Notes: generated from the letters alone by a model not told the origin. Shown: positions 21,060-51,472, counted from the first letter of the stretch. The stretch is 64,000 bases of DNA from IMGVR_UViG_3300020473_000010:186001-250000, one strand, 5' to 3'. A program made the numbers and translations.

Positions 21060-23513
21060 TTACGATTTTCTATAGATTATAGAAACATTATCATCCAAAT
21101 CGATATCAAAGTTGAAAACAACATGCTCAGCACTAGAAGCACCTTGACCATAGTCATAATCTAAATCTTGACCATCATGACCACCAGTAGATGAAGCAAA
21201 AGATACATCTGCAAGAGAGGAATTTCCAGCAGACCCATTTGCAGTTCTTAACGAGAGAGGACGATCATGTCCAGTATTTGAACTTCTAGCAGCACCCCAG
21301 TCATTGAACATGCTATCAAAAGCACCTCCACCACCGGTTGCCCAACATCCTTTTGCTTGAATTGTCATTCTTACTGCAGCACCGCCTTCGTTTGCTACTG
21401 AAGCTTTATAATCTGCATCCGGATCTCCCAAAAATGGGTCGATTTCTGCTGCAAGATTTTCTAAAGCAGCAAACTGTGTTGCTCCAATATCAACTGGATA
21501 TCCATTAATAATGTCATCACATTTAATATTTAATCTGTCACCGTTTGTGTTTGATGCATCAACACCGTATTGGCCGGATTTGACAAGAAACCTTCCAGCA
21601 CGAGACGTACGAGTTGCTGTCTGGTCAGTTCTGACCCATGTGGTATCAGCACCAGATGAATCAACACCAGCAAGACAGTCGCCATCAGCAATCTTTTGGG
21701 CGCCATCAGCGCGGAGTGCACACCATTCAATTCGCGTATCATTTGCGTCTGGCTGATTAGCTCCAAATTCTAATGTTTGTGCAACAGCAGCAGTTTGGTT
21801 AAAGTTACATAAGTGAAGATATCCATCATTACTTCCTTGGATCACGCTTCGAAAAGCTCTGTAAAGCCGTAACTCTACTAAGCCTACATCACTACCTCCG
21901 GTACCAAAGTTGCTTGCTGAACCTCCAACAAATTCTATAATATCGTTATCTTTGATTTTGTCAAAAATATTTTTATGATCGCCGTTGGCATATTCAATAA
22001 CACCGCAGAGGGACTCGACATCAAACAAAAGGTTACCGCCACCGGCGTTGTTTCCAATCGCTGAATTTGGAACAGTAATAGTTTCATTAACTACAAATCC
22101 TTTACCAGGCTGAATAACTGTTACAGTTGCAGACATTCCGTTGGCGGCTGTAACGATTTGATATTTGGCGCCGACACCAGAAGATTGAGTTGTTACACCG
22201 TTTTGACCAGCTTCGACGTTGTAAGTTTGAGACGCCGGCCAGGCATTACCGCCATTTGCTTGAATACTATCAACTGATTTACAGCCAGAGTTAGAAAACT
22301 TGGAACCAGCAACATTAAGAGCTGATCTTTTATTTGTTGCATCAGCTTTTGCAATTGAATTTGGTCGATCTACATATACAAAAGTTGCACTGTCAGTTGT
22401 TTTATCAACACCCTTAGCCGATATCTTAATGTGAGATCCAGGAGTGATCAAATAACCGCTAGCGGAGCCCCCGGTAAGTAATACTTGATGATCTGCTGTA
22501 GCAGCAGCAGCAGTTCTGAAAGGGAAATCTAAAGTGCCTTTTGCTGGAAGGCCAGTTGATGAAGGTCTTAATAAAATACCATTGTGGTATATATCCATAT
22601 ATTGACTGTTTGTTCCAGTGGTTTTGAAAGTGTCAGTACCAAGATTGCTTAATGCTGATAAATTCCATTCATCCTGCATATTTCCTTGAATTCTTACTTC
22701 TCGTCCAGCTGTAATTTTATCATTAGCAGCAATTTGAATAAAACGTTTTTGACGCGTTTCTTTAACATCTAACCACTGAAGCTGTAATTCGCGATTTGAA
22801 CCATCGATAGTATTATTTGCTTGGATTGCTAATACCATGCCGGCAGCAGCTGTAGTGGAATTAGCAGGCAATTTATATCGACAGTTTCTGTTTTCTGCGT
22901 CTGCTGTACCAAAGGAAAAAGCGGCATAGTTGTCTCCGTCAGCATCTTCAAACCTAAGATTAGTATCAGATTTTATCGCAATATCATTAGCACCTAATTT
23001 TTGTAATTTATCGACTTGTAAAATACCGTCTCCGCGCAGAACCAATTTATCAGCTGCAGCAGCAGCAGAAGCTAATTTTACTGTAAAAGTTGCAACAGCA
23101 TCTGCGACTTCGGTGATTTCATTTAAGGATTCTACTTTTATTTGTGCAAAGTTGCCGGCGGCTGCAGCTTCGGAATCTTCTGTTTTAAATTTAATTGTTC
23201 CAATATCGTCACCAGCCCCTATTGAAGTATCTAGATTCGAAAACTGTAGAGTAGCGCCTCCATCGACATTTATTTGAGTGTTTGCTTGGTCCATTTGTCC
23301 AGCATTCTGATTAAACCAGTCTGATTTACCGTTAATTCTAGAAAGAGCGCGACCATATTCTTGTAAAAGGTCATTTACGTCTTGGACGTCTATGGCTGCA
23401 ACTGATGTTGAATTTTGTAAAGCATTATCCACTTTTAGAGCTAATGGGTCTGTGGAATTATGTGCCCCAAGAGTTCCAGACAAGTGCTGTAGCCTAAATT
23501 GAGTTTTATACAT
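21060..23513 (-). CDS. Fibre/decoration-like virion protein (817 aa), paralog of 23620..25764
   Basis: Ala/Gly/Asp/Thr-rich. Shares KTQxRLQ, YGxAxSRIxGKxDWFxQxAGQ, NLDTS...GDDIG, KLASxAAAA and PGSHIK, and the C-terminal F.FD...DD...YR, with its neighbour. Confidence 0.65.
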   Translation of the reverse strand: MYKTQFRLQHLSGTLGAHNSTDPLALKVDNALQNSTSVAAIDVQDVNDLLQEYGRALSRINGKSDWFNQNAGQMDQANTQINVDGGATLQFSNLDTSIGAGDDIGTIKFKTEDSEAAAAGNFAQIKVESLNEITEVADAVATFTVKLASAAAAADKLVLRGDGILQVDKLQKLGANDIAIKSDTNLRFEDADGDNYAAFSFGTADAENRNCRYKLPANSTTAAAGMVLAIQANNTIDGSNRELQLQWLDVKETRQKRFIQIAANDKITAGREVRIQGNMQDEWNLSALSNLGTDTFKTTGTNSQYMDIYHNGILLRPSSTGLPAKGTLDFPFRTAAAATADHQVLLTGGSASGYLITPGSHIKISAKGVDKTTDSATFVYVDRPNSIAKADATNKRSALNVAGSKFSNSGCKSVDSIQANGGNAWPASQTYNVEAGQNGVTTQSSGVGAKYQIVTAANGMSATVTVIQPGKGFVVNETITVPNSAIGNNAGGGNLLFDVESLCGVIEYANGDHKNIFDKIKDNDIIEFVGGSASNFGTGGSDVGLVELRLYRAFRSVIQGSNDGYLHLCNFNQTAAVAQTLEFGANQPDANDTRIEWCALRADGAQKIADGDCLAGVDSSGADTTWVRTDQTATRTSRAGRFLVKSGQYGVDASNTNGDRLNIKCDDIINGYPVDIGATQFAALENLAAEIDPFLGDPDADYKASVANEGGAAVRMTIQAKGCWATGGGGAFDSMFNDWGAARSSNTGHDRPLSLRTANGSAGNSSLADVSFASSTGGHDGQDLDYDYGQGASSAEHVVFNFDIDLDDNVSIIYRKS

Positions 23514-23567
23514 ATTTTTTCTCCAAAATATTTTATAAGATTAAGATTATAACTTTCTCAAACATCC

Positions 23568-23606: not shown

Positions 23607-23619
23607 AGACGACTACGGT

Positions 23620-25764
23620 TTATTGTCTATAAACCACGCATAAGGTATCATCGATTTCAAGGTCAAAAGCAAAAACAATGTAAGAATTGCCTGATCCTCC
23701 AACACCATAATCACCATTCAGTGCAACGCCGCCAGCAACTACTGGGCCGAATGTACCACCAGTAAGTGCTACATCTGAGTTTGCATTTGCATCTCTTAAT
23801 GATATAGGATTTGCGAAAGAAGTAATAGCGCCATTATCCGGAGCAACACCTTGAAGATTTCTTTGTGAAGTGAATGTAAGATCGCTAGCAGTAGCAACTT
23901 TATATCTTCCAGCAGTAATTGTACAATCAGCGCGATTTCCATCGATTGCAGTTGCTGCAGAATGGAAAGTTTTGTCTGCGGTACCTGCCCAAAGGCCTGT
24001 TTTACCAAGAGCAACTGCCAAGGCATCCCAAGCATTCTTTTGTGTAATAGTATTTGAAGCCAACGTGATGTCTTGAGCATTACAGACATCAACAGCAATT
24101 GCGCCGATGATATCGTTGTGTACAACAGATAATTTCTTTGCATCATGAGATGAAACGTCGGTAGCTCCGGAGATAAGTTTATATCTCTCTGCGCCATCAT
24201 TAGCAGAACGCTGATTCGCAAGGGTTTGTGGATTAGCACTGGTACCGTAAGCTCCAGCAATACAATCACCGACCGCAAGTACATCACCTGTATGAATAGC
24301 ATAGGAAGTTAACTTGAAAGTGTGTCCACCTGTTCCTGCAGAAAGAGTGATAACAGCTTCGTCTTGGTCATCAATTTCACAAAGCTGGATTCGATCTGTA
24401 GCCGGCTTCGAGCGAATTCTGTATAGAGTGCCATTGACCAGCCCACCAGGCATGCCACTTGCAACCTGTTCAGCTAACAGAGTATCACCAACTCTTACTG
24501 CTGCCCAAAAGGTATTTGGAACGATGACTCGATCTTGGGCTGCGTCGATACCTGACGCCGCGTCAAGGTTTCCTGTTGTTCCTTCAGCGTCTGTAAATCC
24601 GGCGCCTGTTCTTCCAGCAGCTCCTGCCAAGATAGAAGAGTATCTATCAACAAAACAGAAAGTTTTATTTTCGTCATAAAGGGTTACCTTGATGTGAGAA
24701 CCAGGCACGACTGGATATACATCGCCGTCTCTGTTTTGAGCTGTTCCACCAATAGCTACTGTAGCATCTTGATCGGGGCAACGGATATCTAAAGTTCCTC
24801 GAGCGTGACTGGTGTTTGAAGGCTGAAGATATTGACCGTTAACATAAATATCTAATCTTTGTTGTTCACTATTGCCGGAGACCATAGAACCTGCAGCAAT
24901 ATCTGGAGTTAAAGCAAGGTTATAACCGGTGGCTCCATCTAAATCAAATTCAACACCAGCTCTGACGTCGTTTGAGGCGCTAATTGTTAGGAATTTTTTC
25001 TGTACTGGATCGGCTGCTGTAATCCAGTCTAATTGGACTGTTGTTAAAGGGTCACCAGAGTCAGTTGAACTAATACCTAAAAGCTGGTTTGCTGATGCTG
25101 TTGAACTGTCGGCTGGTAATTTTAAGATAACACTTTTTGTTGTGTTAGCAGAGTAATCCCAAGCAGCATAGTGAGAATCATCACTGTCATACATCCGAAG
25201 TAAAGTGTCTCCTTTTACAGATATATCACCAGTACTAGTTAATTCTTGTAATTTATCAATTTTTAATGTACCATCGTGGGTTAAGCGCAACTTTTCTGCG
25301 GCTGCTGCACCACTGGCCAATTTAATGCTCATTTCTGCTTTTGCATCCCCAACGGAGCCGATGGCGTTAGAAACTTGCTCTACATATAATTGAGCGAAAT
25401 CGGCAGCAGCGCCGGCTTCTGAATCAGCAGTTGTCCATTTAATAAGACCTATATCATCACCAGTATTCACGGAAGTGTCTAAGTTTCTTAAAGTGATTTG
25501 TGGAGCTGAAGCATTTCTAATATCTAAATTATGAGTAAATTGTCCTGCAGCTTGGGAGAACCAGTCTCCTTTTCCTGAGATACGAGAAATTGCATTACCA
25601 TATTGTTGTAATATTCCTGCCAAGTCGCCTACGTCGATTGCTTCAGCGGCAGCGGCAGCGGGGAGGGCACCATCTGTATTAGCTTTAATTGCATAATCGC
25701 GAGAGTCGCCACTAGCAGCTAAAGATCCAGTCACGGCCTGTAATCTAATTTGTGTTTTAGCCAT
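23620..25764 (-). CDS. Fibre/decoration-like virion protein (714 aa), paralog of 21060..23513
   Basis: Same shared motifs as its paralog, and a similar TTTTGGAGAA ribosome-binding context. Confidence 0.65.
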   Translation of the reverse strand: MAKTQIRLQAVTGSLAASGDSRDYAIKANTDGALPAAAAAEAIDVGDLAGILQQYGNAISRISGKGDWFSQAAGQFTHNLDIRNASAPQITLRNLDTSVNTGDDIGLIKWTTADSEAGAAADFAQLYVEQVSNAIGSVGDAKAEMSIKLASGAAAAEKLRLTHDGTLKIDKLQELTSTGDISVKGDTLLRMYDSDDSHYAAWDYSANTTKSVILKLPADSSTASANQLLGISSTDSGDPLTTVQLDWITAADPVQKKFLTISASNDVRAGVEFDLDGATGYNLALTPDIAAGSMVSGNSEQQRLDIYVNGQYLQPSNTSHARGTLDIRCPDQDATVAIGGTAQNRDGDVYPVVPGSHIKVTLYDENKTFCFVDRYSSILAGAAGRTGAGFTDAEGTTGNLDAASGIDAAQDRVIVPNTFWAAVRVGDTLLAEQVASGMPGGLVNGTLYRIRSKPATDRIQLCEIDDQDEAVITLSAGTGGHTFKLTSYAIHTGDVLAVGDCIAGAYGTSANPQTLANQRSANDGAERYKLISGATDVSSHDAKKLSVVHNDIIGAIAVDVCNAQDITLASNTITQKNAWDALAVALGKTGLWAGTADKTFHSAATAIDGNRADCTITAGRYKVATASDLTFTSQRNLQGVAPDNGAITSFANPISLRDANANSDVALTGGTFGPVVAGGVALNGDYGVGGSGNSYIVFAFDLEIDDTLCVVYRQ

Positions 25765-30300: not shown

Positions 30301-30805
30301 CAGTTCTGTGTTGGAATGGTGCAAAAGCTGAGCCATCAGGCTGAGTTCCATCGGCTTTTTGAGATAAAATAAAACCTGAATTATTAGAATTAAAATGATC
30401 CTTTCCAGTTGATCCGGGAGCATTCTGGCCTGTTGAGGCTTGGGTGAGGTCGACAGAATGTTTTAGAGCTCCGTTAACGTAAAGTTTTAAAGTTCCTTGT
30501 TCAGCGCTTCCAAAAGAATTTGCAACATAATTTGTGACCCCTGTATTATGTTGGTTTTTAATAACATCTTCATTTAAATCACCAGAGATAACTTGGGTAC
30601 CGTTATATATACCTTTTCTAATATTGTTGCCCGAGGTTGTAGGGGCATAAGAGCTATTAACATTAGCCGCAGGGGAGAAGCCGGCTGTTGTTGAATGAGA
30701 TATATAGGGATTGCCACTAGATGATTGATCATTTCCGGCACCGAAAGATAATAGTCCCGTAATTCCAGGGCTTGTATCACAGTCGATGTTATCTAATGGC
30801 GGAGC
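27335..30805 (-). repeat. Intragenic tandem duplication of a ~560-aa unit (copy 1 ~29147-30805, copy 2 27335-~29116)
   Basis: APPLDNIDC vs APKVERIDC starts are 1689 nt apart. Shared TTAGFSP, LKLYVNG, QRNGWNYARVVHSISGQ, IPG.T.WMD and WTG. Near-identical DNA at ~28590-28620 and ~30247-30277. Confidence 0.85.
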
Positions 30806-32967: not shown

Positions 32968-35900
32968 CTAATCTTTGAGTTGTCCCATTCCCCATCCGCT
33001 CCCGCCTGGTCCGTTGTTGTTTCCGGGCCCAGTTGAAATCGTAATTGATGTATCTTCTGCAATATTAATAGTTCCGTGACCATCATCTTCTTCTTCTGGG
33101 TTATTGGTTATTAAAGTGTTTTGATGGTTCTCTTCTTCTATATATGGGATATCTGACTGGTTTTCGCCAGATGTATTAAAACGCATTGAGTCATCTCCAG
33201 TAATTTGTGTATCAATTTCAACATTGCTCCAAAACGATGCCTGAACTGGACTATCAACTTCTACTAACTCATCATTTTCATCTATATAAACTAATTTTGT
33301 GTCTTTTCTTTGCTCGAGCCGATCACACCAAAAACCAAAATGGTTTCTTCTATATACGGCGGATAACCTTAGCGGTTGAACACTACTAAATCCATATTTA
33401 GCCCCCCTGATATGATCGATATAGAAGTGGGTGTTTGTTGCATCATAACCAAATGTCCACCAATAATATGTGACTTTAACTTCCCAAGGGTGTCTTGGCA
33501 GGAGCAAAGATCTATGAACTTTCCTGATCCCTGTTCCAAAACCAAAGAGAATTTTAGTAGTATTAATATAGGCTGTATAACTGTCAATTTCGTTTAGTTG
33601 GGTATCCGAATGCTCACGAGTGAATGGAGCAGCGTATTTGAGGTCATTAACGCCAAGCGCTGGACTGGTATTGGCAGGAGGAGATGCGTCGTACCTTACT
33701 TGGTCATAATATCCATCTAGATAGAAGCCCTCTGTACCTCCGGGGTTGGATGGGACAGTTCTATATAGAACATAATCAACACCCGGCCGTGAATCTACTG
33801 AACCAAGAGTTTTTGGTGCCTCTAGATCTCGATACCGCTTAGAGTATGGCCATGTAAAAGGCCATATTTTATTGTGTTTATAATCGCCAGACTCCCAATC
33901 ACCAATAGTATAATAATCAACCGCTGCTAAGTCATTAATACTGGCGCCATCAGCCGGCCAGACTTTGAATAAATCATAATATATTGAATCTTCGTGGAAA
34001 TATTTGTTATCAGATAATTTTAAATTTCTTTTAAGAGCACCATATTTTCCAGAGCCATCAGAAGAAGCCTTTCCAACAGTTTTTCGGTTAAAATTAATTC
34101 CCTCACTGTTATATAAAGTTCCAGTCTGGTTATCAGAGAAAAAATCTGGTTGATGAGAGCCAGACATTAACTTATCATGGAAAGATCCACTAAAAGCCGT
34201 TCTATATTGAATATCCCATTGATCGTGCCAAAGATCTTTAAACGTGGTATTAATATTTTTAGTAAATTGAGGAGTTTGATTTAAATTATTAGGTTTTGGT
34301 TGAGCAGCCTTCATATAAGAGCCAAACATTCTAAATCTTACTTTACTTCCTAGTGGAAGTTCCACTCCGGAGGAAGACATGCTATATGGCATGCCAGAGG
34401 AAGGAGAAAGATGTAACGCAAATATTAATTTATCAGTTGGCAAAATTACCATCGGCATATTCTCTCTCTGGGGAGATTTTGAGAAAGATAAATTTTGAGG
34501 TGCTTGGCTGAATATTGGATTAGGATAAGAAATTGTTTTTTTACCTAAGTCTGTAGCAATAGGAGTACCCCAGGTAGCATTAGCTGGGTCATCCCGGCCT
34601 GAGACTGCACCAAAATCCCAGCTTAGACTTGTCTGCTTACGGCCGCCTGAGGTACCAACATAATCCATCCCAACATTTTTTAATTTATCATATTTACACG
34701 GCTCGAACCTAATACTAAAACTTTGATTTGAACAAACTATTGGGAAAGAAGTGTTATCAGGTTGAGCCTTAAACGAATTTGAATAATTGGCTTTTGTTAT
34801 CTTTGGGAGAATGGTATTTTCCCACACATTTCTTTGGTTAGTTTGCGCAGTTGTCGGAGGACTTGAAATAGTTGTCCATACTATTGCTTTTCCAATGGCT
34901 AAGATATCTCTATTTTTTGCCGGATCCGTAGTGGATGTTGTTGTTGTTGTAGAAACTTTAAGATTTGCGGCGGCAGCAGAAACTGATCCGTCCATATCAT
35001 AAAGGGGGATTTCAGAGGTAAACCCTAATGACTCTGGGTATTCTTTCATTAAAATTGCGGAGATATCCCATGTCATTATATCGGTGGAGAGTTGGTAGGA
35101 AGGGCTAGAATGAGATTGATCCCATGATTTGATAAAATTGTCGTGCCCATAAAGGTTTACACCTTCGAATTCTACAATTAGTTTTTCCAACAAAAAAGGC
35201 TCATGAATTAAATCAGATGCACTTATTGATTGTCCAGATGTTGAATTATATTTTTTATCCGAAGGAAAACCAAAAGAAGATACAATACCGCCTGGTGAAT
35301 TATAGAATTCGTCACCAAATGCTTGTTGGGCTGTTCCGTCCGGAGATATCATTACTGTAGTTCCGTTAGAGCCTGGACCAATTGAATGAAGAGTATCTAG
35401 ATAAGACTTGGCCGCGGCTGTATTTTGACCTGGCCAGGAATAATTTGTTTTATTGTTAAATTGGTTTCCAGTAAAACTATAATAAGCCATAAAACTCATA
35501 TTTTGGTTGGTATAATTAGATGTCCTATCATTAAACCCAAGAAGAGTCGCTTTTGAATTATTTAATTCTAAATATATTTGCTGTTTATCATCTAAAGACT
35601 GACTAGCAAATGGGAGAGCCGTTGAGATATAACTTGTTCCGGAAACGTAGAAAATGCTATCATTTTCTAGTACTCTGTTATCGTTAAATGGAGGGAGAGT
35701 TGGACGATCGACTCTATCATAAAATTCATCATATATAGAATATTCTTCTGGCAAATGTATTGATCCAGTTTGGTGGCTTCCGGACATTTTGTATGTGTTG
35801 ACAGTAATACTTCCGTCAGGATTGGTAAACTCTTTTACAACATCAAACGGTGCCTGATATTGAGGATGGGTAGGGTTTTTTCCTATAGGATCTTCTATAG

Positions 35901-37080
35901 GAACATCTAGATTTCCGTCTAGATAGAAATCATACAAGAAATTTGATAATAATGGGTCTTCTGAATTCAGTTTTGAAGGATAATTAACAGTTCCTTTAGT
36001 TGAATCGACATGCATTCGAGAGTCGTCCCAGAAAATTTTATGGTCGCCTTTTCTAGTGTGGTCGATTCCTCTGTGAAGTGTTGGAAAAAATCCTCTATCA
36101 TCCATTTCCCTATATTTAGCTCGAGCAGGAATATTTAAATATCCAGATTTTATTCCATGTGCTCCTCTTATTGACGCCTTATAAAGAAAAGCAATTTGTT
36201 CATCAGATAAATTTACAATCTGGGACCCTGCGAAAATAGCTAATTCAGAAAACTCCCCGTGGAAGAAAGCAGGTTCTCTTGCTCCGGAACTTATGTTTGC
36301 CTCACCATAGCCGTTGGCAAAAATAATGGCTGAATTTTCATTAGGGTTTCCAGTTCTTGTTCTGTAAGATGCAGGACTATATTCTGAAATAGCCTCTGTT
36401 TGCTGTGGTATACCATTTACAAATATTTTTGGATTGGCTGCAGAAAACTGGGCTGAAGTAAAGGTGTGGTTTGTAGAATCTAAAACAGAAGCTTGTACGG
36501 GGAGGTGGAAAATTATATGCTGCCATCCAAGAGAAAGCTTGTTTGCTAATGTAAAATTAAAAAACGAGGTAGTTCTTCCTAAGTATCGAAAACCTATTTG
36601 ACCGGCGGAATCTCCACCTCCGTTTCCAAATATCTCCCAATAAGGTTCTTTGAATCCAGATGTTGGATCATATGCCATGCATGTCATATAACTATTTCCA
36701 GCATTCGAAGCTGCGGGGTGGGACCCAGATTTAATATTTACCCAAAATGAGATTAATAAGCCGTTTCCTGGGGTTAAATCATGTTCGAGGAAACCTTTGC
36801 ACAAATTCGTACTCATGTCTATTGTAGTGGTTGGATAACTCCAGCCCTTGAGGGGAAATTTATCTGAAATTGGAGTATCTACAGTTATAGAATCACGAGC
36901 GGATGATATTAGCGTTCCTTGCTGGATTATGTTGGCAATATGAAAAAGATCATCCTCTTTTTTTGATGCTCGTAACCACAATTTTAAAGAATTTCTATAA
37001 TCATAAATCCCGGAAGAACGATAATATCGCTGATCCTTAAGAAGATTATATCTTTCTCTCTTTTTTGAATAAGTTGGCAT
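32968..37080 (-). CDS. Large virion protein with an N-terminal LamG-like domain (1370 aa)
   Basis: ISFWVN/WQHIIF/KIFVNG/GEFSELAIF form a LamG-like pattern; lies next to the baseplate genes. Confidence 0.55.
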   Translation of the reverse strand: MPTYSKKRERYNLLKDQRYYRSSGIYDYRNSLKLWLRASKKEDDLFHIANIIQQGTLISSARDSITVDTPISDKFPLKGWSYPTTTIDMSTNLCKGFLEHDLTPGNGLLISFWVNIKSGSHPAASNAGNSYMTCMAYDPTSGFKEPYWEIFGNGGGDSAGQIGFRYLGRTTSFFNFTLANKLSLGWQHIIFHLPVQASVLDSTNHTFTSAQFSAANPKIFVNGIPQQTEAISEYSPASYRTRTGNPNENSAIIFANGYGEANISSGAREPAFFHGEFSELAIFAGSQIVNLSDEQIAFLYKASIRGAHGIKSGYLNIPARAKYREMDDRGFFPTLHRGIDHTRKGDHKIFWDDSRMHVDSTKGTVNYPSKLNSEDPLLSNFLYDFYLDGNLDVPIEDPIGKNPTHPQYQAPFDVVKEFTNPDGSITVNTYKMSGSHQTGSIHLPEEYSIYDEFYDRVDRPTLPPFNDNRVLENDSIFYVSGTSYISTALPFASQSLDDKQQIYLELNNSKATLLGFNDRTSNYTNQNMSFMAYYSFTGNQFNNKTNYSWPGQNTAAAKSYLDTLHSIGPGSNGTTVMISPDGTAQQAFGDEFYNSPGGIVSSFGFPSDKKYNSTSGQSISASDLIHEPFLLEKLIVEFEGVNLYGHDNFIKSWDQSHSSPSYQLSTDIMTWDISAILMKEYPESLGFTSEIPLYDMDGSVSAAAANLKVSTTTTTSTTDPAKNRDILAIGKAIVWTTISSPPTTAQTNQRNVWENTILPKITKANYSNSFKAQPDNTSFPIVCSNQSFSIRFEPCKYDKLKNVGMDYVGTSGGRKQTSLSWDFGAVSGRDDPANATWGTPIATDLGKKTISYPNPIFSQAPQNLSFSKSPQRENMPMVILPTDKLIFALHLSPSSGMPYSMSSSGVELPLGSKVRFRMFGSYMKAAQPKPNNLNQTPQFTKNINTTFKDLWHDQWDIQYRTAFSGSFHDKLMSGSHQPDFFSDNQTGTLYNSEGINFNRKTVGKASSDGSGKYGALKRNLKLSDNKYFHEDSIYYDLFKVWPADGASINDLAAVDYYTIGDWESGDYKHNKIWPFTWPYSKRYRDLEAPKTLGSVDSRPGVDYVLYRTVPSNPGGTEGFYLDGYYDQVRYDASPPANTSPALGVNDLKYAAPFTREHSDTQLNEIDSYTAYINTTKILFGFGTGIRKVHRSLLLPRHPWEVKVTYYWWTFGYDATNTHFYIDHIRGAKYGFSSVQPLRLSAVYRRNHFGFWCDRLEQRKDTKLVYIDENDELVEVDSPVQASFWSNVEIDTQITGDDSMRFNTSGENQSDIPYIEEENHQNTLITNNPEEEDDGHGTINIAEDTSITISTGPGNNNGPGGSGWGMGQLKD

Positions 37081-37082
37081 TT

Positions 37083-40000
37083 TTACCTCAATAAATCCCT
37101 ATAATAATAATTATCCCATTGTTGACCAGCTTCATCAATCCAGCCGCATGCTTGTTCAACTGCATCATATGGCAAACTTGATAAATCACATCGTTTTATT
37201 GCAGCATGCAAATTTACATTATACTGGTTTGATGGTTGTAATCTATATTCAAACCCATCAACAGGGTCGATATAGGGGAAAGCAACATTATTATTTCTGG
37301 TGATTTTTTCAAATGTATCCATGGCGTTTACTTTAATTATTTTAAAAGCTAATTGAGCATTAAAATTAGGGAAATAAACAGAATAAATATCTCTTTGTGG
37401 GTTTTTTATTGTTATTTTAGCGTCTGCCATAGTTACATTATTTAACCATTTTTGTGTCCATATTGCGGGGGAATATGTTTCCCCATTTGCAGAATAAGTA
37501 ATCCCTTCATCGGCTGGTCTTGCTAGAATCTGAGTTTTAGAACCATGACCTATTATTAAAGGGTATTTTCGAAAAGCATCAGGTTTATCAAGGGATACAT
37601 CTGAAAGATCTAGTACTAATTCTTGATCTGATCTTACATTATAAGATCTTGGGTAGCCATCCCATGTATATTTTAAATCGTTTCTTTCTGAGTTGTACCA
37701 AGAAGGACCGGCAGGATTATTCCAACTAAAATAATATGTTATTTTTGCAGTTTTCAATGTTGTTAATGCGGAAATCATTTCATTATCTAGTTGAACAATA
37801 GCCCCTGTATCACGATCAAGAAATTCTTGATTAGCAAATGTATCAGGCTCAATCCACTCAGCTTCATCAAGATATGCTTCGACTTCCGAGTATCCAGTTC
37901 TGATTTGTCTTGTTAGTCTGTGAGGGGTATTTATATAGGTTACAGAAGCCAAATCAAGTGCAGCTCCACCACTTAAGGCGCTTAAAGTTATTCCATTGGA
38001 AGATACGGCTTTTACCTTGTAAGAGGTACCATGAACCAACACGGTTGTTCCGGAACCGTTTTTAATAGCGCCGAGCCCTAGATTTTCATATAAAACGATA
38101 TCACCTATACCAATTTGGTCTTGGAAATCAGTACCAATCGGGTCTATTTCGTCGGTTGTAAAACTGATGTTTGCTCCTGTAAACGTGGAAGTAATAGGCG
38201 TAGTATCATGATAATTCCAATTTTGATGAATGCCAAAATCCCCCTCAGATCCCAATACATTAAAAGGAAGGTAAAGTGGGTGATCTAGAAATCTTGGAGA
38301 ATCTAAATCTCTTTCACTGATTGTAGTATAATTTCTTATAGGCCTTGGGACACCAAGAGGGTTTTTTGTAATTATTCCAGTATATGCTGATAAGGGGTGC
38401 TGTTGTTTTGGAGAAAACGTTATGTTTTGAGTAATAATATCCCTTACATAGGACATTGGCCCAGTTATTCCTTGCCAAGCTAAATTGTGATCATATGTTG
38501 GTGTATTATATAAATCAAACCATGGCTCATCCGGAATAGACATATAATGTTCTTGGGCTTCCATATATTCAACCGTTGAAAATCCCCCCTGGAATAATAC
38601 AATGTCAGGTTCTCCAAGAGAGGCGTCTCCGACCCTTGATCTTCTACCTCCTAAGTCTTCGTAGATTTCTTTTTCTTCTTTGTAGACTGTATCCTTTCTA
38701 TGAAGACTGTGAAACCCATAAGACCATTTTGTTGAATCGTTACGAAATCTTTTCTTAACAAAATTTGTTGCCGGGGCTGCTGACGGTCCATTGATGTCCG
38801 GAAAATGGACTTCTTGCTCAATTTGTTGAGGTATTTGCAAAACCCAACCGTCATTGACGGCGGTGGTGATATTCACCCGATGATCGTGGTAGGTACTCCA
38901 TGCCGAAAGACCAGCCCAGTCTGGGTATATTATTGCGGGATCAATTCCCGCATTTGAGGCTTTCATAATATCAGCAATTGGATTTGTATCTTTATACCAC
39001 TGCGATTCAAGAAACGGTTGGCAATAAGGGTATGTTCCGGCCATCCTTCCAATAACAAATTTATCGTGAAAATATTCCGGTATATCCGCCAATTCTGCTG
39101 AAGAGCGATCAACTATTAAGTTATCATTGTTTTGGGTTTGAAGAGACGGCTCTGATAAAATACTCTTAAGAGGTAGTAACCCAAGGGGTTGGTTTGCTAG
39201 GTCAGGGGCTCTGTCGACATAATCCTTCGAAGCAATGAGATAAAAATCTGTAGCTCCTTTTGGGTTATATACTGGGTGAAAGGGGAATTGTCGGTGCTTT
39301 GATTCCCAATTATTAATATCTGATTCATTAAAATAAACCATTTTTAATTGACCGCCAGAAGGATTTCCAGAAGATGCACCTCTTTTTACTATTATGCCGA
39401 CATAGGCTCCAGGATATAATTCATCACCCCATTTTGGAGTTGGGGATGCTGCTTTATCAATTGTGTCGTAATATGCATCAGAATTATAAGATCCACTTAA
39501 AATTTTCCTTTCTGATTGAAAATACCTCTGTTGATGAACAACATTTCCGGCTTGAGTTTCATATCGATTAGTCCTCCTAAAAGTATCATACGGTATATTT
39601 TTATGATTTTCGCCATTCTCGAAAGCGGCAGTGGGGGCGGAAACATCCGTAATGTTAGAAAGGGAGAATGTAGTGTTTCCTAATTTTCCTCCAACGTCTT
39701 GTACTAAATTAACTTTGGAAGAGGCGCTTGTAGCTGATATTTTTATTGGATTTGTAGATGTTATCGCATCTGCGAAACGAGAGGCAATATCAGCGACGGT
39801 GCTAGCACCAGATAATCCTATGATTGCAGATTTATTATATCCTTTCGAAAAATTTGTTGATGTTAGACCAGAAACACTTGAAGTATTTAGGGTAGTATTT
39901 CCGGAAATTCCATTAGTTCCTTGCGTAAGCTTGATTGTAGTAGTTGTTGGTGATTCTGAGGTTATGTTAATATAACCTTGAGCTTGAGCAGATTGAAGAG

Positions 40001-40532
40001 CGTTTAAAATTCTTTCTGTAATTGCGGGGTTTCCGGAAGCACCATCTAAACCGATAATAACTTTTGAACCATCCAGTTTTCCATCGACAGTATCAACGGC
40101 TGATTTAAATATAAATTCTTTTGATATGTTGTTACTATCAATAATTGTAAATGTTGAGTTATTTGCTGGGGTTCCTCCGCCGATAGTTAGGGTTGCGGTG
40201 GCCGGCTGTGTAACCATGGTACCATCTACAGTAGTAGAAGTTTTATCAACATGAAACATCTGAGACGTACGCTCAGAGTCTGTTAAGACAAAATACTCAT
40301 CTGTTGCTTGTGAGGTGCCGGTAATATTTAAGACTTGACGCCCTGGAATTGATATCGATTTTGATACCGCTGTGACTTCTTCATATTCTATATAAGAATC
40401 ATGTCTTCCAATTACGTACGGTGTTGCGGTTCGATCCATAAACGGGAGTGATGACTGGGTATATTGATCAATTCCTGGTTGGGTATCATTTAACCTTCCG
40501 TATCTCTCCTGTCTTGATGTGTCTTTTGACAT
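37083..40532 (-). CDS. Large virion protein (1149 aa) carrying nested inserted modules
   Basis: TAATG-coupled to the gpI-like gene; contains two homologous Thr/Ser-rich modules, one inside the other (see findings). Confidence 0.55.
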   Translation of the reverse strand: MSKDTSRQERYGRLNDTQPGIDQYTQSSLPFMDRTATPYVIGRHDSYIEYEEVTAVSKSISIPGRQVLNITGTSQATDEYFVLTDSERTSQMFHVDKTSTTVDGTMVTQPATATLTIGGGTPANNSTFTIIDSNNISKEFIFKSAVDTVDGKLDGSKVIIGLDGASGNPAITERILNALQSAQAQGYINITSESPTTTTIKLTQGTNGISGNTTLNTSSVSGLTSTNFSKGYNKSAIIGLSGASTVADIASRFADAITSTNPIKISATSASSKVNLVQDVGGKLGNTTFSLSNITDVSAPTAAFENGENHKNIPYDTFRRTNRYETQAGNVVHQQRYFQSERKILSGSYNSDAYYDTIDKAASPTPKWGDELYPGAYVGIIVKRGASSGNPSGGQLKMVYFNESDINNWESKHRQFPFHPVYNPKGATDFYLIASKDYVDRAPDLANQPLGLLPLKSILSEPSLQTQNNDNLIVDRSSAELADIPEYFHDKFVIGRMAGTYPYCQPFLESQWYKDTNPIADIMKASNAGIDPAIIYPDWAGLSAWSTYHDHRVNITTAVNDGWVLQIPQQIEQEVHFPDINGPSAAPATNFVKKRFRNDSTKWSYGFHSLHRKDTVYKEEKEIYEDLGGRRSRVGDASLGEPDIVLFQGGFSTVEYMEAQEHYMSIPDEPWFDLYNTPTYDHNLAWQGITGPMSYVRDIITQNITFSPKQQHPLSAYTGIITKNPLGVPRPIRNYTTISERDLDSPRFLDHPLYLPFNVLGSEGDFGIHQNWNYHDTTPITSTFTGANISFTTDEIDPIGTDFQDQIGIGDIVLYENLGLGAIKNGSGTTVLVHGTSYKVKAVSSNGITLSALSGGAALDLASVTYINTPHRLTRQIRTGYSEVEAYLDEAEWIEPDTFANQEFLDRDTGAIVQLDNEMISALTTLKTAKITYYFSWNNPAGPSWYNSERNDLKYTWDGYPRSYNVRSDQELVLDLSDVSLDKPDAFRKYPLIIGHGSKTQILARPADEGITYSANGETYSPAIWTQKWLNNVTMADAKITIKNPQRDIYSVYFPNFNAQLAFKIIKVNAMDTFEKITRNNNVAFPYIDPVDGFEYRLQPSNQYNVNLHAAIKRCDLSSLPYDAVEQACGWIDEAGQQWDNYYYRDLLR

Positions 40533-43500
40533 TATAATACCTCGTTAGTAATAGTGCCTATAATATCAAGAGGCGGTAATTCTGCCGCTCTTCTATCGTA
40601 TATATCGACATGTACATCACCTTGTTTGTATTCATATTTGTGACGCTCTAAGAAATGGGATTCAATAACAAAATTTACTCCAAAGAATTGAACCGTGTTT
40701 GGCATCATTCTATCAATTAATGGTCCAAAGTTTAAAGAAAACCATTTAAAAAAATCATATAGAGATTTATAATTTATCTTATCAGTTAATCGATTAAAAT
40801 ATTTTTCTCTTAAATGTTCTAATTTAGGATAATTTACCGCATATTCGAGCTCCGGGGCGCCTAAATATTCGTTAAAGAGACCTAGATCGCTTATTATGTT
40901 TACCATATCTTCGTTAACTCGCTGTACAGAAGACATTTCAATTGAAAATCTTCGATCATCAACCGCCGAAAGTTCTGATGGATTATATAATGGTGCTTGA
41001 GCTAAATTGTTTTTATGGGCTTTAATTGGGTCTAAATAAGAATTAACTCTGATTTTATTAGTTGTAATAAATTGATCAAAATCCGGATTAATGATACTAA
41101 AATAAAACGGCTTTGAACTAATTACTTCCTGTCCATGAACACCGGGTGTAGCACCGCCGGCGGTGGCGCTCAATAAATTTTGGGAAATATCATCAATAGT
41201 TAGTTTTCCGGAACTAGGATTTGAACCTGTAATTTCTTGATAAAATTCATATTGCCCGCGAAGGCGTTCCCATCCACCCTGAGGGACGGACCCTTCGTAT
41301 CTTGTCGACAAGTTTGCTATATTAAACTCTTGAGGTGTTATAAAATTATAATTTGTTATTGGATCGTCTGCCCCTACAGAATATGGGTTTATGGCATGTT
41401 CTCGTCGTTCTACATCGGTTAGGCTCTTTGTCCAAAACCTTACTGCAGACAATTGTCCATCATATTGCTTTACTGAAGCTGATATTGCAGTTAGGCTATT
41501 AAGGTGAGACGTTGTATCAACATCATCTTTTCTTACCAGAAATCCATCATCATAATTTCCTGGTGTTTCTTGCCCAACTATAAAATATGGGCCATTTGGA
41601 GTATATAAAGAACTAAAAGCGCCTAAAACATTATCGGTTGAGGTGGCATAATAATAACTTGCAGAATGTGAAGCAAAAATACCATCAACTGTAGGCCTTG
41701 AGAGATGTAAATTAATTTTTGAATAATCTTTTCCTAATTCGTGGTCGACATTAACATACCATCTTGAGCCATCCCATATATTAACTCCCGGGATGGTTAA
41801 TTGGGCTGATACATCCGCTATAGGCACCAGTGAAGCCACATCGAAAGTTAAGGGATCACCGCCGGCGTTACCAATTTGAGAATCAGGTACTGACCAAGAT
41901 GAGTTAATTTGATAGCCTTTACCTCCATTTGTTACAGAGACCGTAGCAACACCACTAGAATCAATTGTAATACTGCAAACAGCATCTGTTCCATTTGCTG
42001 CAGTTACTCCGGAGATGCCATCAGTTACGGTGTATGTACCAGCTGGCCATTTGGTACCGGTATTGGTACTAATTGTATCTACGGTTGCAATAGCTCCGTT
42101 TATTGAGACCGAAGACGATAAAAATAATTGGACTTTTTGATCTAGATCAGCAAACTGTTTATCTTTTCTGCATGCTACTAAGTTAACATAGATTTCTTTC
42201 TTTCCAACACTGTTTTCCGATTCAATCCTCATTAATGATTGAGACAAAATGTTAGATTCCGGATCTAAATTATAATGACCTTCATAAGACCAGGAACCAG
42301 ATGTGAATTGTGTGAGAGTTGGCGCATCTGCTGGTTGTACTATAACAATATCTCCAGCTTCAAGCAATATTTTACTAGCACCAGGACCAGATGCGTTATC
42401 TGGGGCCCCGGGGCAATGGCGATAGGCTTTTAAATTCGAAGATTTAAAATAGTTAATATTTTTAAAATTTAAAAATTTATAATTTGAAGATTTTTTAACA
42501 CGGGAATCAGTAAGAGTTAATGTTTTGGATCCACCATATTCCCTCATACGGAAACCAGTTTCTATATCTAGACCAACAGCATTCATCAAACTTTTTATTG
42601 ATTTAATTGTGCCTTTTGACCTGAGTAGATAAGGAAACTGGATTAATAATTGGGCCCATAACTGGGTAATTGTTTGTTTCAGGGTTGAGGTGGTTCTTCC
42701 TTTTTCGAATTTTAAATTTTTCGTGTCGTGATATTGCGCCGGAGAAGCATCAGAAAACGGGTTTGGCAATTCAAATCCGTAAAACCTAGCAAGAAAAGGC
42801 ATAAATTGCAGTGGTATCGAATCTTCTGAATCATAATTTGCCAATCTTAAAGTTTTAAAAGTGTCTAGATAAATTTTTAATTCATCAAAATAATTTGCCC
42901 ATATAAGAAGAAACATTGTCAAAACTTGAGCTTGCGGTATTTTTCCGCCGGATGGAAAATTTGTTTTTGTATTGTAAACTTTTGCAATATCCCCATCTTC
43001 TGTTTCAAACCCTTCAAAAAACTGAGATTCTAAAAAATAGTGTTTTGGAACTAGTTTCGTAATTAAATTTGGATTATTAATATCATAACGACTAGCTGAA
43101 ATTAATAAATTTTCGTTTAGTGATATTACATCCGGGTGGGATGGAAACAAAATTGGGCTCATATTTTCGTTTTCGTTGACAACTGGTACCGAATAAGATC
43201 CACTTAATCGACATGGGGAATAATTTCCAGATGTTGAATTAATTTGCCCATGCAAACCGTTTCCGCTATAATCTAAAGTAATATTAGCATTTGAATAAGA
43301 TCCGGTTGCTTCATTAAATTTAAAATATAGATTTAATTCATCCTGGGCTGTTACTCCGTCATCAGCTATTTCTCTTAATTCAATAGGTGTATGGGATTTG
43401 CTCCAAATCTTGAAGTCATCCATGGAGCCAGTTAGTGTATCTGCTGGGGACCAGGTTTGGATTGAACCTCCGGAATCGACATAGCGAGCTGGCTTACTAA

Positions 43501-44380
43501 TATCTCCATAACCAATAAGAGCTTTCTTGTTTTTAACAGGTAATTTTTCAAACTCTACTTGATTGCTTGAAGAAACAATATCCGTAGAATTTAAAATAAG
43601 ATACAATTTTTCTGTATCCGTTCTGTCATACTGTATTGCAATATGGTTAAAAACACCTCGAAGGATTTGTTTTTCTACAACCAGTGACTTAAGATCGCTA
43701 GCAGACCCTGAAGATATTATTGCTACCATCTTATAGCTTTTATCTGATGAAGCTGTTGCATCTACCCCAATTGTAACGCCAGAATACCCATCTGTGGAGA
43801 TATGCTGAAACAATACTTGACGCTGAGTGGTACCTATTCCTGAGTTGGGAAAAGCATAATGGAAATCTATCTGAAAATGTTTTTCACTTACATCTTTTAT
43901 GATAGATGCTTCGTATTTTGAATTGCGTGACAATGCTGGGAAAAGATAACCTGTTCTGTCGTCAAATGTAATATAATTTTTATCAGCAGAATGAAAAGTG
44001 AAATACCCTACTTGTTTTGGGAACTTAGATAAAATATAAGCATCAAACCCAGTTAAATTATCCATATAATCCCAAACTTCTGGGGCTTTGCCATCAAAAG
44101 GGAAGCTGTTAATGATTTTATCAAATGCTAAATTTACTTTTGCTTCTGCACTATTAAAAAAGCAGTGATTAGCAAAGTTGCTCCAATCAGTAAATATTTG
44201 CTGGGTAGATTTAAGCCCAGTACCTGGTTGATCAGTTCGCCAGCTACTTAGAGATTCAGAAGTCAGAGGCTGTAATTTTTTATCTAGAAAAGAATTTGTA
44301 ATACCCCTAAATGCTTTTCCGGCATATTGAATATCCTCCCATTCTGATGTTCCAAATAAATAATTCTTTTTTCTTGTCAT
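40532..44380 (-). CDS. Baseplate wedge protein, P2 gpI/T4 gp7-like, with LamG domain(s) (1282 aa)
   Basis: IPLQFMPFLARFYG...PYLLRSKGTIKSIKSL is a gpI-type L..LA...KGT motif. LamG-like NHIAIQY and GSMDDFKIW. Lies downstream of the gp25- and gp6-like genes. Confidence 0.7.
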   Translation of the reverse strand: MTRKKNYLFGTSEWEDIQYAGKAFRGITNSFLDKKLQPLTSESLSSWRTDQPGTGLKSTQQIFTDWSNFANHCFFNSAEAKVNLAFDKIINSFPFDGKAPEVWDYMDNLTGFDAYILSKFPKQVGYFTFHSADKNYITFDDRTGYLFPALSRNSKYEASIIKDVSEKHFQIDFHYAFPNSGIGTTQRQVLFQHISTDGYSGVTIGVDATASSDKSYKMVAIISSGSASDLKSLVVEKQILRGVFNHIAIQYDRTDTEKLYLILNSTDIVSSSNQVEFEKLPVKNKKALIGYGDISKPARYVDSGGSIQTWSPADTLTGSMDDFKIWSKSHTPIELREIADDGVTAQDELNLYFKFNEATGSYSNANITLDYSGNGLHGQINSTSGNYSPCRLSGSYSVPVVNENENMSPILFPSHPDVISLNENLLISASRYDINNPNLITKLVPKHYFLESQFFEGFETEDGDIAKVYNTKTNFPSGGKIPQAQVLTMFLLIWANYFDELKIYLDTFKTLRLANYDSEDSIPLQFMPFLARFYGFELPNPFSDASPAQYHDTKNLKFEKGRTTSTLKQTITQLWAQLLIQFPYLLRSKGTIKSIKSLMNAVGLDIETGFRMREYGGSKTLTLTDSRVKKSSNYKFLNFKNINYFKSSNLKAYRHCPGAPDNASGPGASKILLEAGDIVIVQPADAPTLTQFTSGSWSYEGHYNLDPESNILSQSLMRIESENSVGKKEIYVNLVACRKDKQFADLDQKVQLFLSSSVSINGAIATVDTISTNTGTKWPAGTYTVTDGISGVTAANGTDAVCSITIDSSGVATVSVTNGGKGYQINSSWSVPDSQIGNAGGDPLTFDVASLVPIADVSAQLTIPGVNIWDGSRWYVNVDHELGKDYSKINLHLSRPTVDGIFASHSASYYYATSTDNVLGAFSSLYTPNGPYFIVGQETPGNYDDGFLVRKDDVDTTSHLNSLTAISASVKQYDGQLSAVRFWTKSLTDVERREHAINPYSVGADDPITNYNFITPQEFNIANLSTRYEGSVPQGGWERLRGQYEFYQEITGSNPSSGKLTIDDISQNLLSATAGGATPGVHGQEVISSKPFYFSIINPDFDQFITTNKIRVNSYLDPIKAHKNNLAQAPLYNPSELSAVDDRRFSIEMSSVQRVNEDMVNIISDLGLFNEYLGAPELEYAVNYPKLEHLREKYFNRLTDKINYKSLYDFFKWFSLNFGPLIDRMMPNTVQFFGVNFVIESHFLERHKYEYKQGDVHVDIYDRRAAELPPLDIIGTITNEVL

Positions 44381-47796: not shown

Positions 47797-48312
47797 TTAT
47801 CCTCCCACATACAACATTATTTCTAAAGATCTAAGGGTATTATCTATTCTCGGAACTTTATATGTAATTTTAAGACCAACTTTTCCTACTTCTTTGTTTT
47901 CATTGCGATCAATAAACGATTGAAATGTTTCCAGATTGACATATGGCATATATTTTGCTGTAGCACGTTTGATTCTAGAAATTGCTTCTACTTCAAAATC
48001 TTCATCTCCAAACTCAAACACTAATTCGCCTAAATTAGCTCCAAAATCATATAGCCCTAAACGTTCTCCATGGTTAGTTTGAATAAGGTTTCTTAAATTA
48101 TCAGCTATTTGGGGACCGATTTTTGTGTTCATGGAAAATAGTGATGTCAAACCTAATTGCAATGGCGTCTTTATCCCTATAGGCAACTCTACAGGAGCTA
48201 TTAAATCCTGTTGTTCTTTTATACTTAAAGCTGTTTCACCAACACTTTTAAAACTATATACTTTTCTATTTCTTAAAGACTGCGCTTTAAAGCGCTGTTG
48301 AATATAACTCAT
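47797..48312 (-). CDS. Baseplate wedge protein, gp25/gpW-like
   Basis: QIADNLRNLIQTNHGERL...FGANL..LVFE...I.....KYMPYV is the gp25-family signature. Confidence 0.9.
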   Translation of the reverse strand: MSYIQQRFKAQSLRNRKVYSFKSVGETALSIKEQQDLIAPVELPIGIKTPLQLGLTSLFSMNTKIGPQIADNLRNLIQTNHGERLGLYDFGANLGELVFEFGDEDFEVEAISRIKRATAKYMPYVNLETFQSFIDRNENKEVGKVGLKITYKVPRIDNTLRSLEIMLYVGG

Positions 48313-51186: not shown

Positions 51187-51472
51187 CTATTTGGTTCTCC
51201 TCGTTTTCTATTTTTGCAATTTCGTTTGCGACTCTGAGAATTGAATCTCTTGAATCCTTAATGTCATTTATAACTTGCCTAATTTGTGGAGAATCATAAA
51301 ATATTGGGATTTCTAAAATTTTTGATACACTAGAATAGCGATCATCTAGAATATCTAAACTTGTTTCTAATGAATCTGTAATTTTTAATATTATATTTGC
51401 AAATTTATAATTATAATATAACGAAACTATTAACGCTATAGAAATTATCGCTAATAACCAATTTATTATCAT
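51173..51472 (-). CDS. Small membrane-anchored hypothetical protein (99 aa)
   Basis: N-terminal hydrophobic helix followed by a coiled-coil-like region. Confidence 0.6.
   Translation of the reverse strand: MIINWLLAIISIALIVSLYYNYKFANIILKITDSLETSLDILDDRYSSVSKILEIPIFYDSPQIRQVINDIKDSRDSILRVANEIAKIENEENQIDERP

What the first reader, a model, noticed from the sequence alone, without database searches (positions are those of the whole stretch)
41828..42095. Same ~90-aa module in the baseplate wedge protein and in a fibre-like protein 20 kb away
Seen: the gpI-like 1282-aa ORF contains TVDTISTNTGTKWPAGTYTVTDGISGVT...ATVSVTNGGKGYQINSSWSVPDSQIGNAGGDPLTFDVASL. The 817-aa ORF (~22008-22280) contains SVDSIQANGGNAWPASQTYNVEAGQNGVT...ATVTVIQPGKGFVVNETITVPNSAIGNNAGGGNLLFDVESL. 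They share VD.I..N.G..WPA, TY.V..G..GVT, ATV.V...GKG, VP.S.IGN.AGG..L.FDV.SL, while the host proteins are otherwise unrelated and the 714-aa paralog lacks the module. In the 817-aa protein it is bracketed by cysteines (SGC...LCG), possibly a disulfide staple. Inference: an in-frame mobile decoration domain moving between structural genes.
Basis: seen in the sequence. Interest (0 to 1): 0.72.

Follow-up and report, generated by a model that had tools for sequence, protein, structure and literature searches.

The report
Shuffled accessory domain in phage tail
Two unrelated tail proteins of an uncultured 289-kb marine phage each carry the same ~95-residue accessory domain, a widespread but uncurated plug-in module of marine phage virion proteins that entered them long ago and shows no sign of a recent hop between the two genes.

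Summary
The 1282-aa baseplate-region protein (P0001, aa ~757-856) and the 817-aa fibre-like protein (P0002, aa ~405-504) share a module at 40% identity over 112 aa (E 3e-14; z 18.7 against shuffles). Nothing else in the two proteins matches, and the 714-aa paralog lacks it.

In P0001 it is an insertion. Of 120 orthologues, 118 have an ~8-residue hairpin loop at that site. Only the closest relative (P0004) carries the module, which is one change on the family tree.

The module belongs to a family with no Pfam model: 135 representative proteins among 1.84 billion, with 1-8 copies per protein. Carriers include sheath, baseplate-wedge, nozzle, gp15-like, hook-like and fibre proteins, notably of T4-like cyanophages. 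With the family alignment AlphaFold gives a confident small beta domain on a hairpin stem (pLDDT 94.8). No clear PDB match exists. There are weak, convergent hints of kinship with T4 sheath Domain I.

The two copies are old: third-codon positions are saturated. They are not each other's nearest relatives, and no mobility machinery or target duplication is present.

So this is ancient domain shuffling among marine phage virion proteins, not an active element moving between these two genes. Function is inferred, not shown: probably a surface adhesion or docking domain.

The parts
40532..44380 (-). P0001, a 1282-aa baseplate-region structural protein and the host scaffold of module copy 1
   Evidence: ORF and translation. 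It lies three genes downstream of a gp25 homologue. At least 618 homologues were found; the top 120 all have E < 1e-171, come from contigs up to 298 kb, and carry Laminin_G_3 at about aa 155-335. An embedding lead points to Baseplate_wedge PF23786.
41813..42112 (-). Module copy 1 (P0001 aa 757-856), inserted in a beta-hairpin loop
   Evidence: The family HMM matches at E 1.3e-31. Alignment occupancy is 2% across 120 orthologues, and 118 have an ~8-aa loop instead. The AF2 model has pLDDT 94.8, and the flanking strands form a long hairpin stem.
21060..23513 (-). P0002, an 817-aa fibre-like protein and the host scaffold of module copy 2
   Evidence: ORF and translation. It is a paralog of P0003. 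The N-terminal ~75 aa are conserved in the variable large proteins at the same position in related contigs L002, L005 and L008.
22002..22301 (-). Module copy 2 (P0002 aa 405-504), bracketed by C411 and C503
   Evidence: The family HMM matches at E 4.1e-27. The region has no counterpart in the collinear paralog P0003. The cysteines are not conserved in the family.
23620..25764 (-). P0003, the 714-aa tandem paralog of P0002 that lacks the module
   Evidence: It gives no HMM hit.
47797..48312 (-). gp25/gpW-like baseplate wedge protein, which anchors the region as a baseplate gene cluster
   Evidence: Pfam PF04965 at E 4.9e-6, 26.7 bits against a cut-off of 27.2. The same family is precomputed for the syntenic gene in L001.

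Best explanation
The shared stretch is a ~95-residue, independently folding beta domain. Its family has no Pfam model and is spread through virion proteins of marine tailed phages. Its first and last strands lie side by side, so it can be spliced in frame into a surface beta-hairpin loop, or strung in tandem, without disturbing the host fold. In the lineage of this 289-kb uncultured phage it was inserted once into a hairpin loop of the large baseplate-region protein, before P0001 and P0004 diverged, and has been inherited vertically since. A second, distantly related copy sits in the variable middle of one of two tandem fibre-like paralogs. The likeliest route is illegitimate or short-homology recombination with other phage genomes (inferred). 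The likeliest role is a solvent-exposed accessory domain that adds weak binding to cell-surface polymers or docks other virion parts, as proposed for Ig-like domains and shown for T4 sheath Domain I (inferred). It is not an autonomous mobile element.
For: Shown: homology between the two copies is significant. There are only two copies in the genome. The module is absent from 118 of 120 P0001 orthologues at a precisely defined loop. P0001 and P0004 form a 100*-supported pair nested inside module-less clades, which gives one change on the tree. Module identity between P0001 and P0004 (54-57%) is close to scaffold identity (59-64%), as expected for co-inheritance. The family has 135 representative proteins of 59-2888 aa, with 1-8 copies each. 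None of the 133 other carriers shares a scaffold with P0001 or P0002. Carriers include Baseplate_wedge, sheath, nozzle, gp15, minor tail, flagellar hook/rod-like, CBM_5_12 and PA14 proteins. They also include cyanophage VrlC, baseplate wedge, neck and tail fibre genes. The AF2 model has pLDDT 94.8 and pTM 0.82, with a hairpin stem plus a small beta domain. Matching folds are almost all viral. The only invariant or near-invariant residues are Gly and Tyr, which points to fold determinants and not a catalytic site. Third-codon positions are saturated, and GC3 is near that of the host genes. Contigs carrying the nearest m1 relatives share nothing but the module with this genome. T4 Domain I is likewise an insertion that protrudes outward and binds the baseplate and retracted fibres (PMC3004832).
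Against: No orthologue of P0002 that covers the module site could be found. At that site, insertion in P0002 cannot be told from loss in P0003. The P0002 copy falls in the same moderately supported subgroup (92/80) as the P0001 clade. Rejection of direct sisterhood is only marginal (AU p 0.049), and the 88-row test was uninformative. Surface exposure and any binding function are inferred, not shown. No full-length host model was made. The recombination mechanism leaves no trace at this age.
Confidence: 0.72

Rival explanations
1. Intragenomic copying: the module was duplicated from one of the two genes into the other within this phage lineage by ectopic recombination. The copies then diverged and were exported to other phages.
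For: Both copies lie in one genome. In the 31-row tree they fall in the same subgroup of 9 rows (92/80). The AU test against sisterhood is only borderline (p 0.049).
Against: The P0001 copy sits in a 98/89-supported clade with copies from four other proteins, and that clade excludes the P0002 copy. P0002 ranks about 15th among BLAST hits of the P0001 copy. Third-codon positions are saturated.
Confidence: 0.13
2. For the fibre locus only: the module is ancestral to the P0002/P0003 family and was deleted from P0003, rather than inserted into P0002.
For: No outgroup orthologue covering the site is available. The P0003 segment at the site is a ~40-aa replacement, not a clean junction.
Against: The fibre-like proteins at the same position in related contigs L002, L005 and L008 have no module. 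They share only the N-terminal ~75 aa with P0002/P0003, so this is weak evidence.
Confidence: 0.2
3. An active in-frame mobile cassette (intein-like, homing-endonuclease-driven or recombinase-driven) that currently moves between structural genes.
For: The distribution is patchy and scaffold-independent. One 10-nt direct repeat (9 of 10 identical) flanks the P0001 copy at 41798-41807 and 42125-42134.
Against: By my estimate, a repeat of that kind is expected about four times by chance in 531 nt. The module has no endonuclease or splicing motifs and no Pfam hit. There is no Rfam element. No near-identical copies exist anywhere: the best identity is 61% at protein level. The insertion predates the P0001/P0004 split.
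Confidence: 0.03
4. Chance or compositional similarity between Gly/Thr/Val-rich beta segments.
For: Both stretches are Gly/Ala/Thr/Val-rich.
Against: z is 18.7 against composition-preserving shuffles. BLASTP with compositional adjustment gives E 3e-14. A family profile recovers both copies at E < 1e-26.
Confidence: 0.01

Closest known systems
Domain I of the T4 tail sheath protein gp18 (Pfam PF22639 Gp18_dom_I; PDB 3FO8/3FOA)
   Same: It is a ~90-residue beta domain (a six-stranded barrel plus a helix). It is itself an insertion, protrudes from the virion surface and is not needed for sheath contacts (PMC3004832). In marine T4-like sheath homologues P0168 and P0212 the module sits right after the segment aligned to T4 residues 4-97, which is where T4 has Domain I. 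The two share a ~23-residue hairpin motif (G..x.tV...G.GY.V.d.Iti): hhalign gives 65-67% probability. At least nine module-bearing proteins give partial PF22639 hits to profile positions ~4-59, mostly 4-40. A whole-domain superposition on T4 residues 99-188 gives rmsd 3.1 A over 75 residues.
Ig-like accessory domains of phage virion proteins (Big_2, I-set and FN3 domains; T4 Hoc). From my own knowledge: Fraser et al. 2006. See also PMC9230969 and PMC10385173.
   Same: They show the same evolutionary behaviour: small beta domains added in frame to many unrelated structural proteins, exchanged among phages, often in tandem, dispensable for assembly, and proposed to give weak adhesion to surface carbohydrates.
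   Different: The sequence family is different. None of 88 modules hits an Ig-type Pfam family, apart from two weak Fn3_arc matches at E about 0.005. Here the module is inserted inside a hairpin loop of the host, not appended at an end.
Giant baseplate-region structural proteins of T4-like cyanophages (Kyanoviridae), such as the P-RSM4 'VrlC protein' and the S-CAM22 'baseplate wedge protein'
   Same: They carry true homologues of the module (37-46% identity, E down to 1e-10) in baseplate-proximal virion proteins. BFVD fold matches reach E 3e-6.
   Different: The host scaffolds are unrelated to P0001 and P0002. Only the module region of P0001 matches any of 50,697 phage records, and P0002 matches none.

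Membership tests
Unnamed module family defined here (alignment A2, 88 sequences) | Significant full-length match to the family profile | tested here: met
   The P0001 copy matches at E 1.3e-31 (profile positions 6-108) and the P0002 copy at E 4.1e-27 (positions 5-108). Both sequences are in the profile. Independent support: BLASTP of each copy finds dozens of family members at E 1e-10 to 1e-28.
Unnamed module family defined here (alignment A2) | Conserved fold-determining residues (invariant Gly of the G.GY turn; near-invariant Tyr and two Gly) | tested here: met
   G71, Y34, G48 and G88 (numbering of P0001:750-863) are present in both window copies.
Pfam PF22639 Gp18_dom_I | Profile match at or above the gathering cut-off (27 bits) | tested here: not met
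   Neither module hits PF22639 at E <= 1. None of the 88 family members does at E <= 0.01. The whole genome gives no match at E <= 1. Only multi-copy carriers such as P0183 (32.3 bits) and P0208 (27.4 bits) reach the cut-off, by summing partial hits to profile positions 4-28.
Pfam PF22639 Gp18_dom_I | Six-stranded beta-barrel plus helix, superposable on T4 gp18 residues 98-188 | tested here: inconclusive
Pfam PF22639 Gp18_dom_I | Location as an insertion in the outer part of a contractile sheath protein | tested here: not met
   The window copies lie in a baseplate-region protein and a fibre-like protein, not in a sheath. Other family members (P0168, P0212, P0159) are in T4-like sheaths at the Domain I position.
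Ig-like phage accessory domains (Big_2, I-set, fn3 and related) | Match to an Ig-type Pfam profile | tested here: not met
   Neither window module has any Pfam hit. Among 88 members there are only two weak Fn3_arc hits, best E 0.0045.
Inteins / homing-type in-frame mobile elements | Splicing junction residues (Cys/Ser at the N-terminus, His-Asn plus Cys/Ser/Thr at the C-terminus) and/or an endonuclease domain | tested here: not met
   No Hint, intein or endonuclease Pfam hit was found. The sequence shows no His-Asn at the C-terminal junction of either copy. At ~95 aa the module is too small to hold an endonuclease.

The most novel reading that the evidence does not exclude
The module is a divergent relative of T4 sheath Domain I that works as a docking pad between virion parts. 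Its presence on both a baseplate-region protein and a fibre-like protein of one phage would then reflect a stowing or triggering contact between fibre and baseplate, as T4 Domain I holds retracted long tail fibres. On this reading the family would be a general 'virion Velcro' of marine phages, not a glycan adhesin.
Probability: 0.07. Interest if true: 0.6.

Novelty: new variant of a known kind. Interest (0 to 1): 0.38.

Why it matters
In-frame shuffling of small accessory domains among phage structural proteins is well known for Ig-like domains. This case adds a clean, dated example with a different domain family. That family has no Pfam model and no clear solved structure, yet it recurs in sheath, baseplate, nozzle, neck and fibre proteins of marine phages, including cultured T4-like cyanophages. 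Defining it would improve annotation of the many giant 'hypothetical structural proteins' of cyanophages and uncultured marine jumbo phages. The precisely mapped hairpin-loop site shows where such proteins tolerate added domains. If kinship with T4 sheath Domain I is confirmed, that classic domain would become one member of a much larger promiscuous family.

Tried and rejected
- Single-sequence AlphaFold of P0001:745-870 gave pLDDT 44 and was unusable. The alignment-based model replaced it.
- A profile search of PDB sequences gave only E >= 0.14.
- Internal duplication of the module (first half vs second half) is not supported: hhalign probability 1.9%.
- Global hhalign to T4 Domain I gave probability 1%.
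- No orthologue of P0002 covering the module site was found:
  - phage records;
  - the 5.8-billion protein index, searched with P0002 and with the P0002+P0003 profile. This index did not even return the paralog, so the word filter was probably swamped by Ala-rich words;
  - IMG/VR;
  - JGI metagenomes, which returned only the same phage (L013) and a contig truncated at residue ~201 (L014).
- The contig carrying P0004 ends before the fibre genes.
- The 88-row AU test is uninformative, because the constrained search found a better tree than the quick free search. It was replaced by a careful 31-row analysis.
- Junction DNA shows only short imperfect repeats of a kind expected by chance.
- Rfam found nothing in 20-46 kb.
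- Complex prediction of the two modules returned 'no answer' (score 0.00). This is evidence neither for nor against binding.
- PHROGs gave only weak hits of the P0001 module to two large structural-protein families, phrog_4527 and phrog_6005.
- Pfam placed Laminin_G_3 at about aa 155-335 of orthologues, not at the insertion site. My impression from motifs that the site lies in a second LamG-like jelly roll remains unverified.

Full report
**Context**

The window is bases 186001-250000 of a single-contig IMG/VR virus record of 288,697 bp. GC is 36% and CheckV completeness is 96%. All large ORFs in the window are on the minus strand.

A gp25/gpW homologue lies at 47797-48312. It is followed by ORFs of 609, 522, 1282 (P0001), 1149, 1370, 1871 and 359 aa. 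Then come two tandem paralogs of 714 aa (P0003) and 817 aa (P0002). Almost none of these has a Pfam or PHROG match.

P0001 belongs to a very large family. At least 618 homologues were found, and the best 120 all have E < 1e-171. They come from metagenomic contigs of up to ~298 kb, many of them marine (Tara), and carry a Laminin_G_3 domain near aa 155-335. Against 50,697 deposited phage genomes, the only part of P0001 that matches anything is the module itself. P0002 matches nothing. The phage therefore belongs to an uncultured jumbo-phage lineage.

P0001 and P0002 share one significant local alignment: aa 747-854 against aa 394-505, 40% identity, E 3e-14. Nothing else in the two proteins matches. 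Against 2000 composition-preserving shuffles the Smith-Waterman score is 167, versus 36 +/- 7, z 18.7.

P0003 is collinear with P0002 over the N-terminal ~390 aa (40% identity) and the C-terminal ~210 aa. It is 103 aa shorter and lacks the module. Six-frame HMM scans find exactly two copies in the genome.

**In P0001 the module is an insertion**

Among the 120 best orthologues, only P0004 matches the module profile. P0004 is the closest relative: 59% identity overall and 64% over aligned scaffold columns.

In the family alignment, P0001 residues ~757-855 are occupied in 2% of rows. The other 118 proteins have about eight residues there, between two conserved strands: a ...L.L.v. strand before and a ...WDGsrWY.nV strand after.

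A tree built without the module columns joins P0001 and P0004 with full support (100*). That pair is nested inside 99*- and 98*-supported clades of module-less proteins. The trait therefore changes once on the tree. Module identity between P0001 and P0004 (54-57%) is close to scaffold identity. This fits a single insertion before their split, followed by vertical inheritance.

**The module is a member of a widespread domain family with no Pfam model**

A profile of the two copies was searched against 1.84 billion representative proteins. It found 135 proteins at E <= 1e-3 and 27 at E <= 1e-10, with lengths from 59 to 2888 aa. Copy number per protein is 1 in 83 proteins, 2 in 34, 3 in 11, and up to 8 in tandem. 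None of the other 133 carriers shares a scaffold with P0001 or P0002.

None of 88 extracted modules hits a Pfam family convincingly. Of 70 carriers scanned whole, the scaffold domains found were:

| Pfam family | Carriers |
|---|---|
| Baseplate_wedge | 4 |
| Phage sheath | 3 |
| Flagellar rod/hook-like | 2 |
| Phage nozzle | 1 |
| T4 gp15 | 1 |
| Minor tail | 1 |
| CBM_5_12 | 1 |
| PA14 | 1 |

In cultured phages the homologues are all in T4-like cyanophages. Examples are the 2488-aa 'VrlC protein' next to gp8 in P-RSM4 and a 6273-aa 'baseplate wedge protein' in S-CAM22. Other carriers there are annotated as neck or tail-fibre proteins.

**Fold**

With the 88-sequence alignment, AlphaFold gives pLDDT 94.8 and pTM 0.82. 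The model shows a long antiparallel hairpin formed by the flanks (model residues 2-19 and 95-113). This stem carries a small beta domain of four further strands and a short helical turn. The chain ends therefore lie together, which is the geometry needed for a plug-in domain.

The only invariant or near-invariant residues are one Tyr and three Gly. That points to fold determinants, not an active site.

**A lead towards T4 sheath Domain I**

Three weak signals converge.

- Sequence: the PDB profile search, hhalign (65-67% probability) and partial PF22639 hits in at least nine module-bearing proteins all align the module's G.GY hairpin with the start of T4 gp18 Domain I.
- Position: in marine T4-like sheath homologues P0168 and P0212 the module sits directly after the segment aligned to T4 residues 4-97. 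That is where T4 has Domain I. These proteins lack a PF22639 match.

There are counter-points. The window copies and the whole genome fail the PF22639 profile. The motif alignment and the structural alignment are out of register with each other. The global profile alignment fails. I therefore treat the module as working like Domain I, not as a member of that family.

T4 Domain I is itself an insertion. It protrudes outward, is not needed for subunit contacts, and binds the baseplate and retracted long tail fibres (PMC3004832). Extra sheath domains in general are thought to serve adhesion or stability (PMC9230969).

**Are the two copies related by a move between the two genes?**

The evidence says no, at least not recently or directly.

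- Codon-aligned nucleotide identity is 52% and third-position identity is 33%, which is saturated. Module GC3 (0.28, 0.33) is near that of the host genes (0.24, 0.23).
- The best relatives of the P0001 copy are P0129 (an unrelated 1796-aa LamG protein on a Tara scaffold, 61%), P0128 (58%), P0004 (57%) and P0134 (50%). P0002 ranks about 15th, at 44%.
- The contigs carrying P0129, P0128 and P0134 share nothing but the module with this genome.
- In a careful 31-row tree the P0001 copy lies in a 98/89-supported clade with those four. The P0002 copy is a long branch outside it, though within the same 92/80 subgroup. Forcing the two together costs 10.6 log-likelihood units (AU p 0.049), which is only a marginal rejection.
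- Junction DNA shows only short imperfect repeats of a kind expected by chance. There are no endonuclease, intein or RNA features.

**The fibre locus**

P0002 and P0003 share their first ~75 residues with the single, highly variable large protein (737-1188 aa) found at the same position in related contigs L002, L005 and L008. In my reading, those proteins contain fibre-type repeats. This is the usual pattern of a conserved anchor with a variable distal part, and it supports the label 'fibre-like'.

None of those proteins carries the module. No orthologue of P0002 covering the site could be retrieved. Insertion in P0002 and loss in P0003 therefore cannot be separated.

The two cysteines of P0002 are not a family feature. 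C411 replaces a conserved Ile/Val core position, and C503 is in a variable column. A disulfide is possible but unsupported.

**Verdict**

The finding is real and the module is a true insertion. What it documents is ancient domain shuffling of a promiscuous accessory domain among marine phage virion proteins, a known kind of event. It is not an active element hopping between these two genes.

The new elements are the domain family itself, which has no Pfam model, no solved structure and a possible tie to T4 sheath Domain I, and the precisely mapped hairpin-loop insertion in a large, uncultured jumbo-phage protein family. Function is inferred by analogy only: surface adhesion or docking. A complex prediction for the two modules returned no answer and is not used as evidence.

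Noticed in passing
window 21060-25764: Two tandem paralogous fibre-like genes (714 and 817 aa). Their first ~75 residues are conserved in the single, highly variable large protein (737-1188 aa) at the same position in related contigs L002, L005 and L008. This looks like a conserved anchor with an exchangeable receptor-binding distal part.
   Followed up: partly
window 40532-44380 and its protein family (P0004-P0122): P0001 belongs to a family of at least 618 proteins on metagenomic contigs up to ~298 kb. The family has no counterpart in 50,697 deposited phage genomes apart from the inserted module. This points to a large uncultured, mostly marine, jumbo-phage lineage. Some orthologues are 1600-1960 aa, so other insertions exist elsewhere in the scaffold.
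   Followed up: partly
window 51469-54720; L001 1-2849: Two GT1-family glycosyltransferase genes and a PDDEXK nuclease gene sit directly upstream of the baseplate genes. The arrangement is conserved in the contig that carries P0004.
   Followed up: no
G000:C1:157800-165729 (outside the window; L015, L016): Two very long open frames (1053 and 1534 aa) each match the phage sheath domain PF04984. These may be two giant sheath-like proteins with many extra domains. Neither carries the module.
   Followed up: no
window 10581-16610, 27335-32950, 32968-37080, 37083-40532: Four giant ORFs (2009, 1871, 1370 and 1149 aa) in the tail region have no Pfam match at all. The 1211-aa ORF at 2721-6356 has a Laminin_G_3 domain.
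   Followed up: no
proteins P0168, P0212, P0159: T4-like tail sheath homologues from metagenomes carry this module at the place where T4 gp18 has Domain I, and they lack a PF22639 match. The module appears to substitute for Domain I in some marine myophages.
   Followed up: partly
window 41798-41807 and 42125-42134: A 10-nt direct repeat (9 of 10 identical) flanks the P0001 module just outside its boundaries. Both copies encode a Gln-Leu in the two stem strands. I judged it chance or structural: by my estimate about four such repeats are expected in 531 nt.
   Followed up: partly
window 1-2150: A calcineurin-like phosphoesterase (ORF 1-1218, which runs off the window edge) and a DnaG-type primase-domain protein (1215-2150) lie at the low-coordinate edge of the window. 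They mark the end of the structural block.
   Followed up: no
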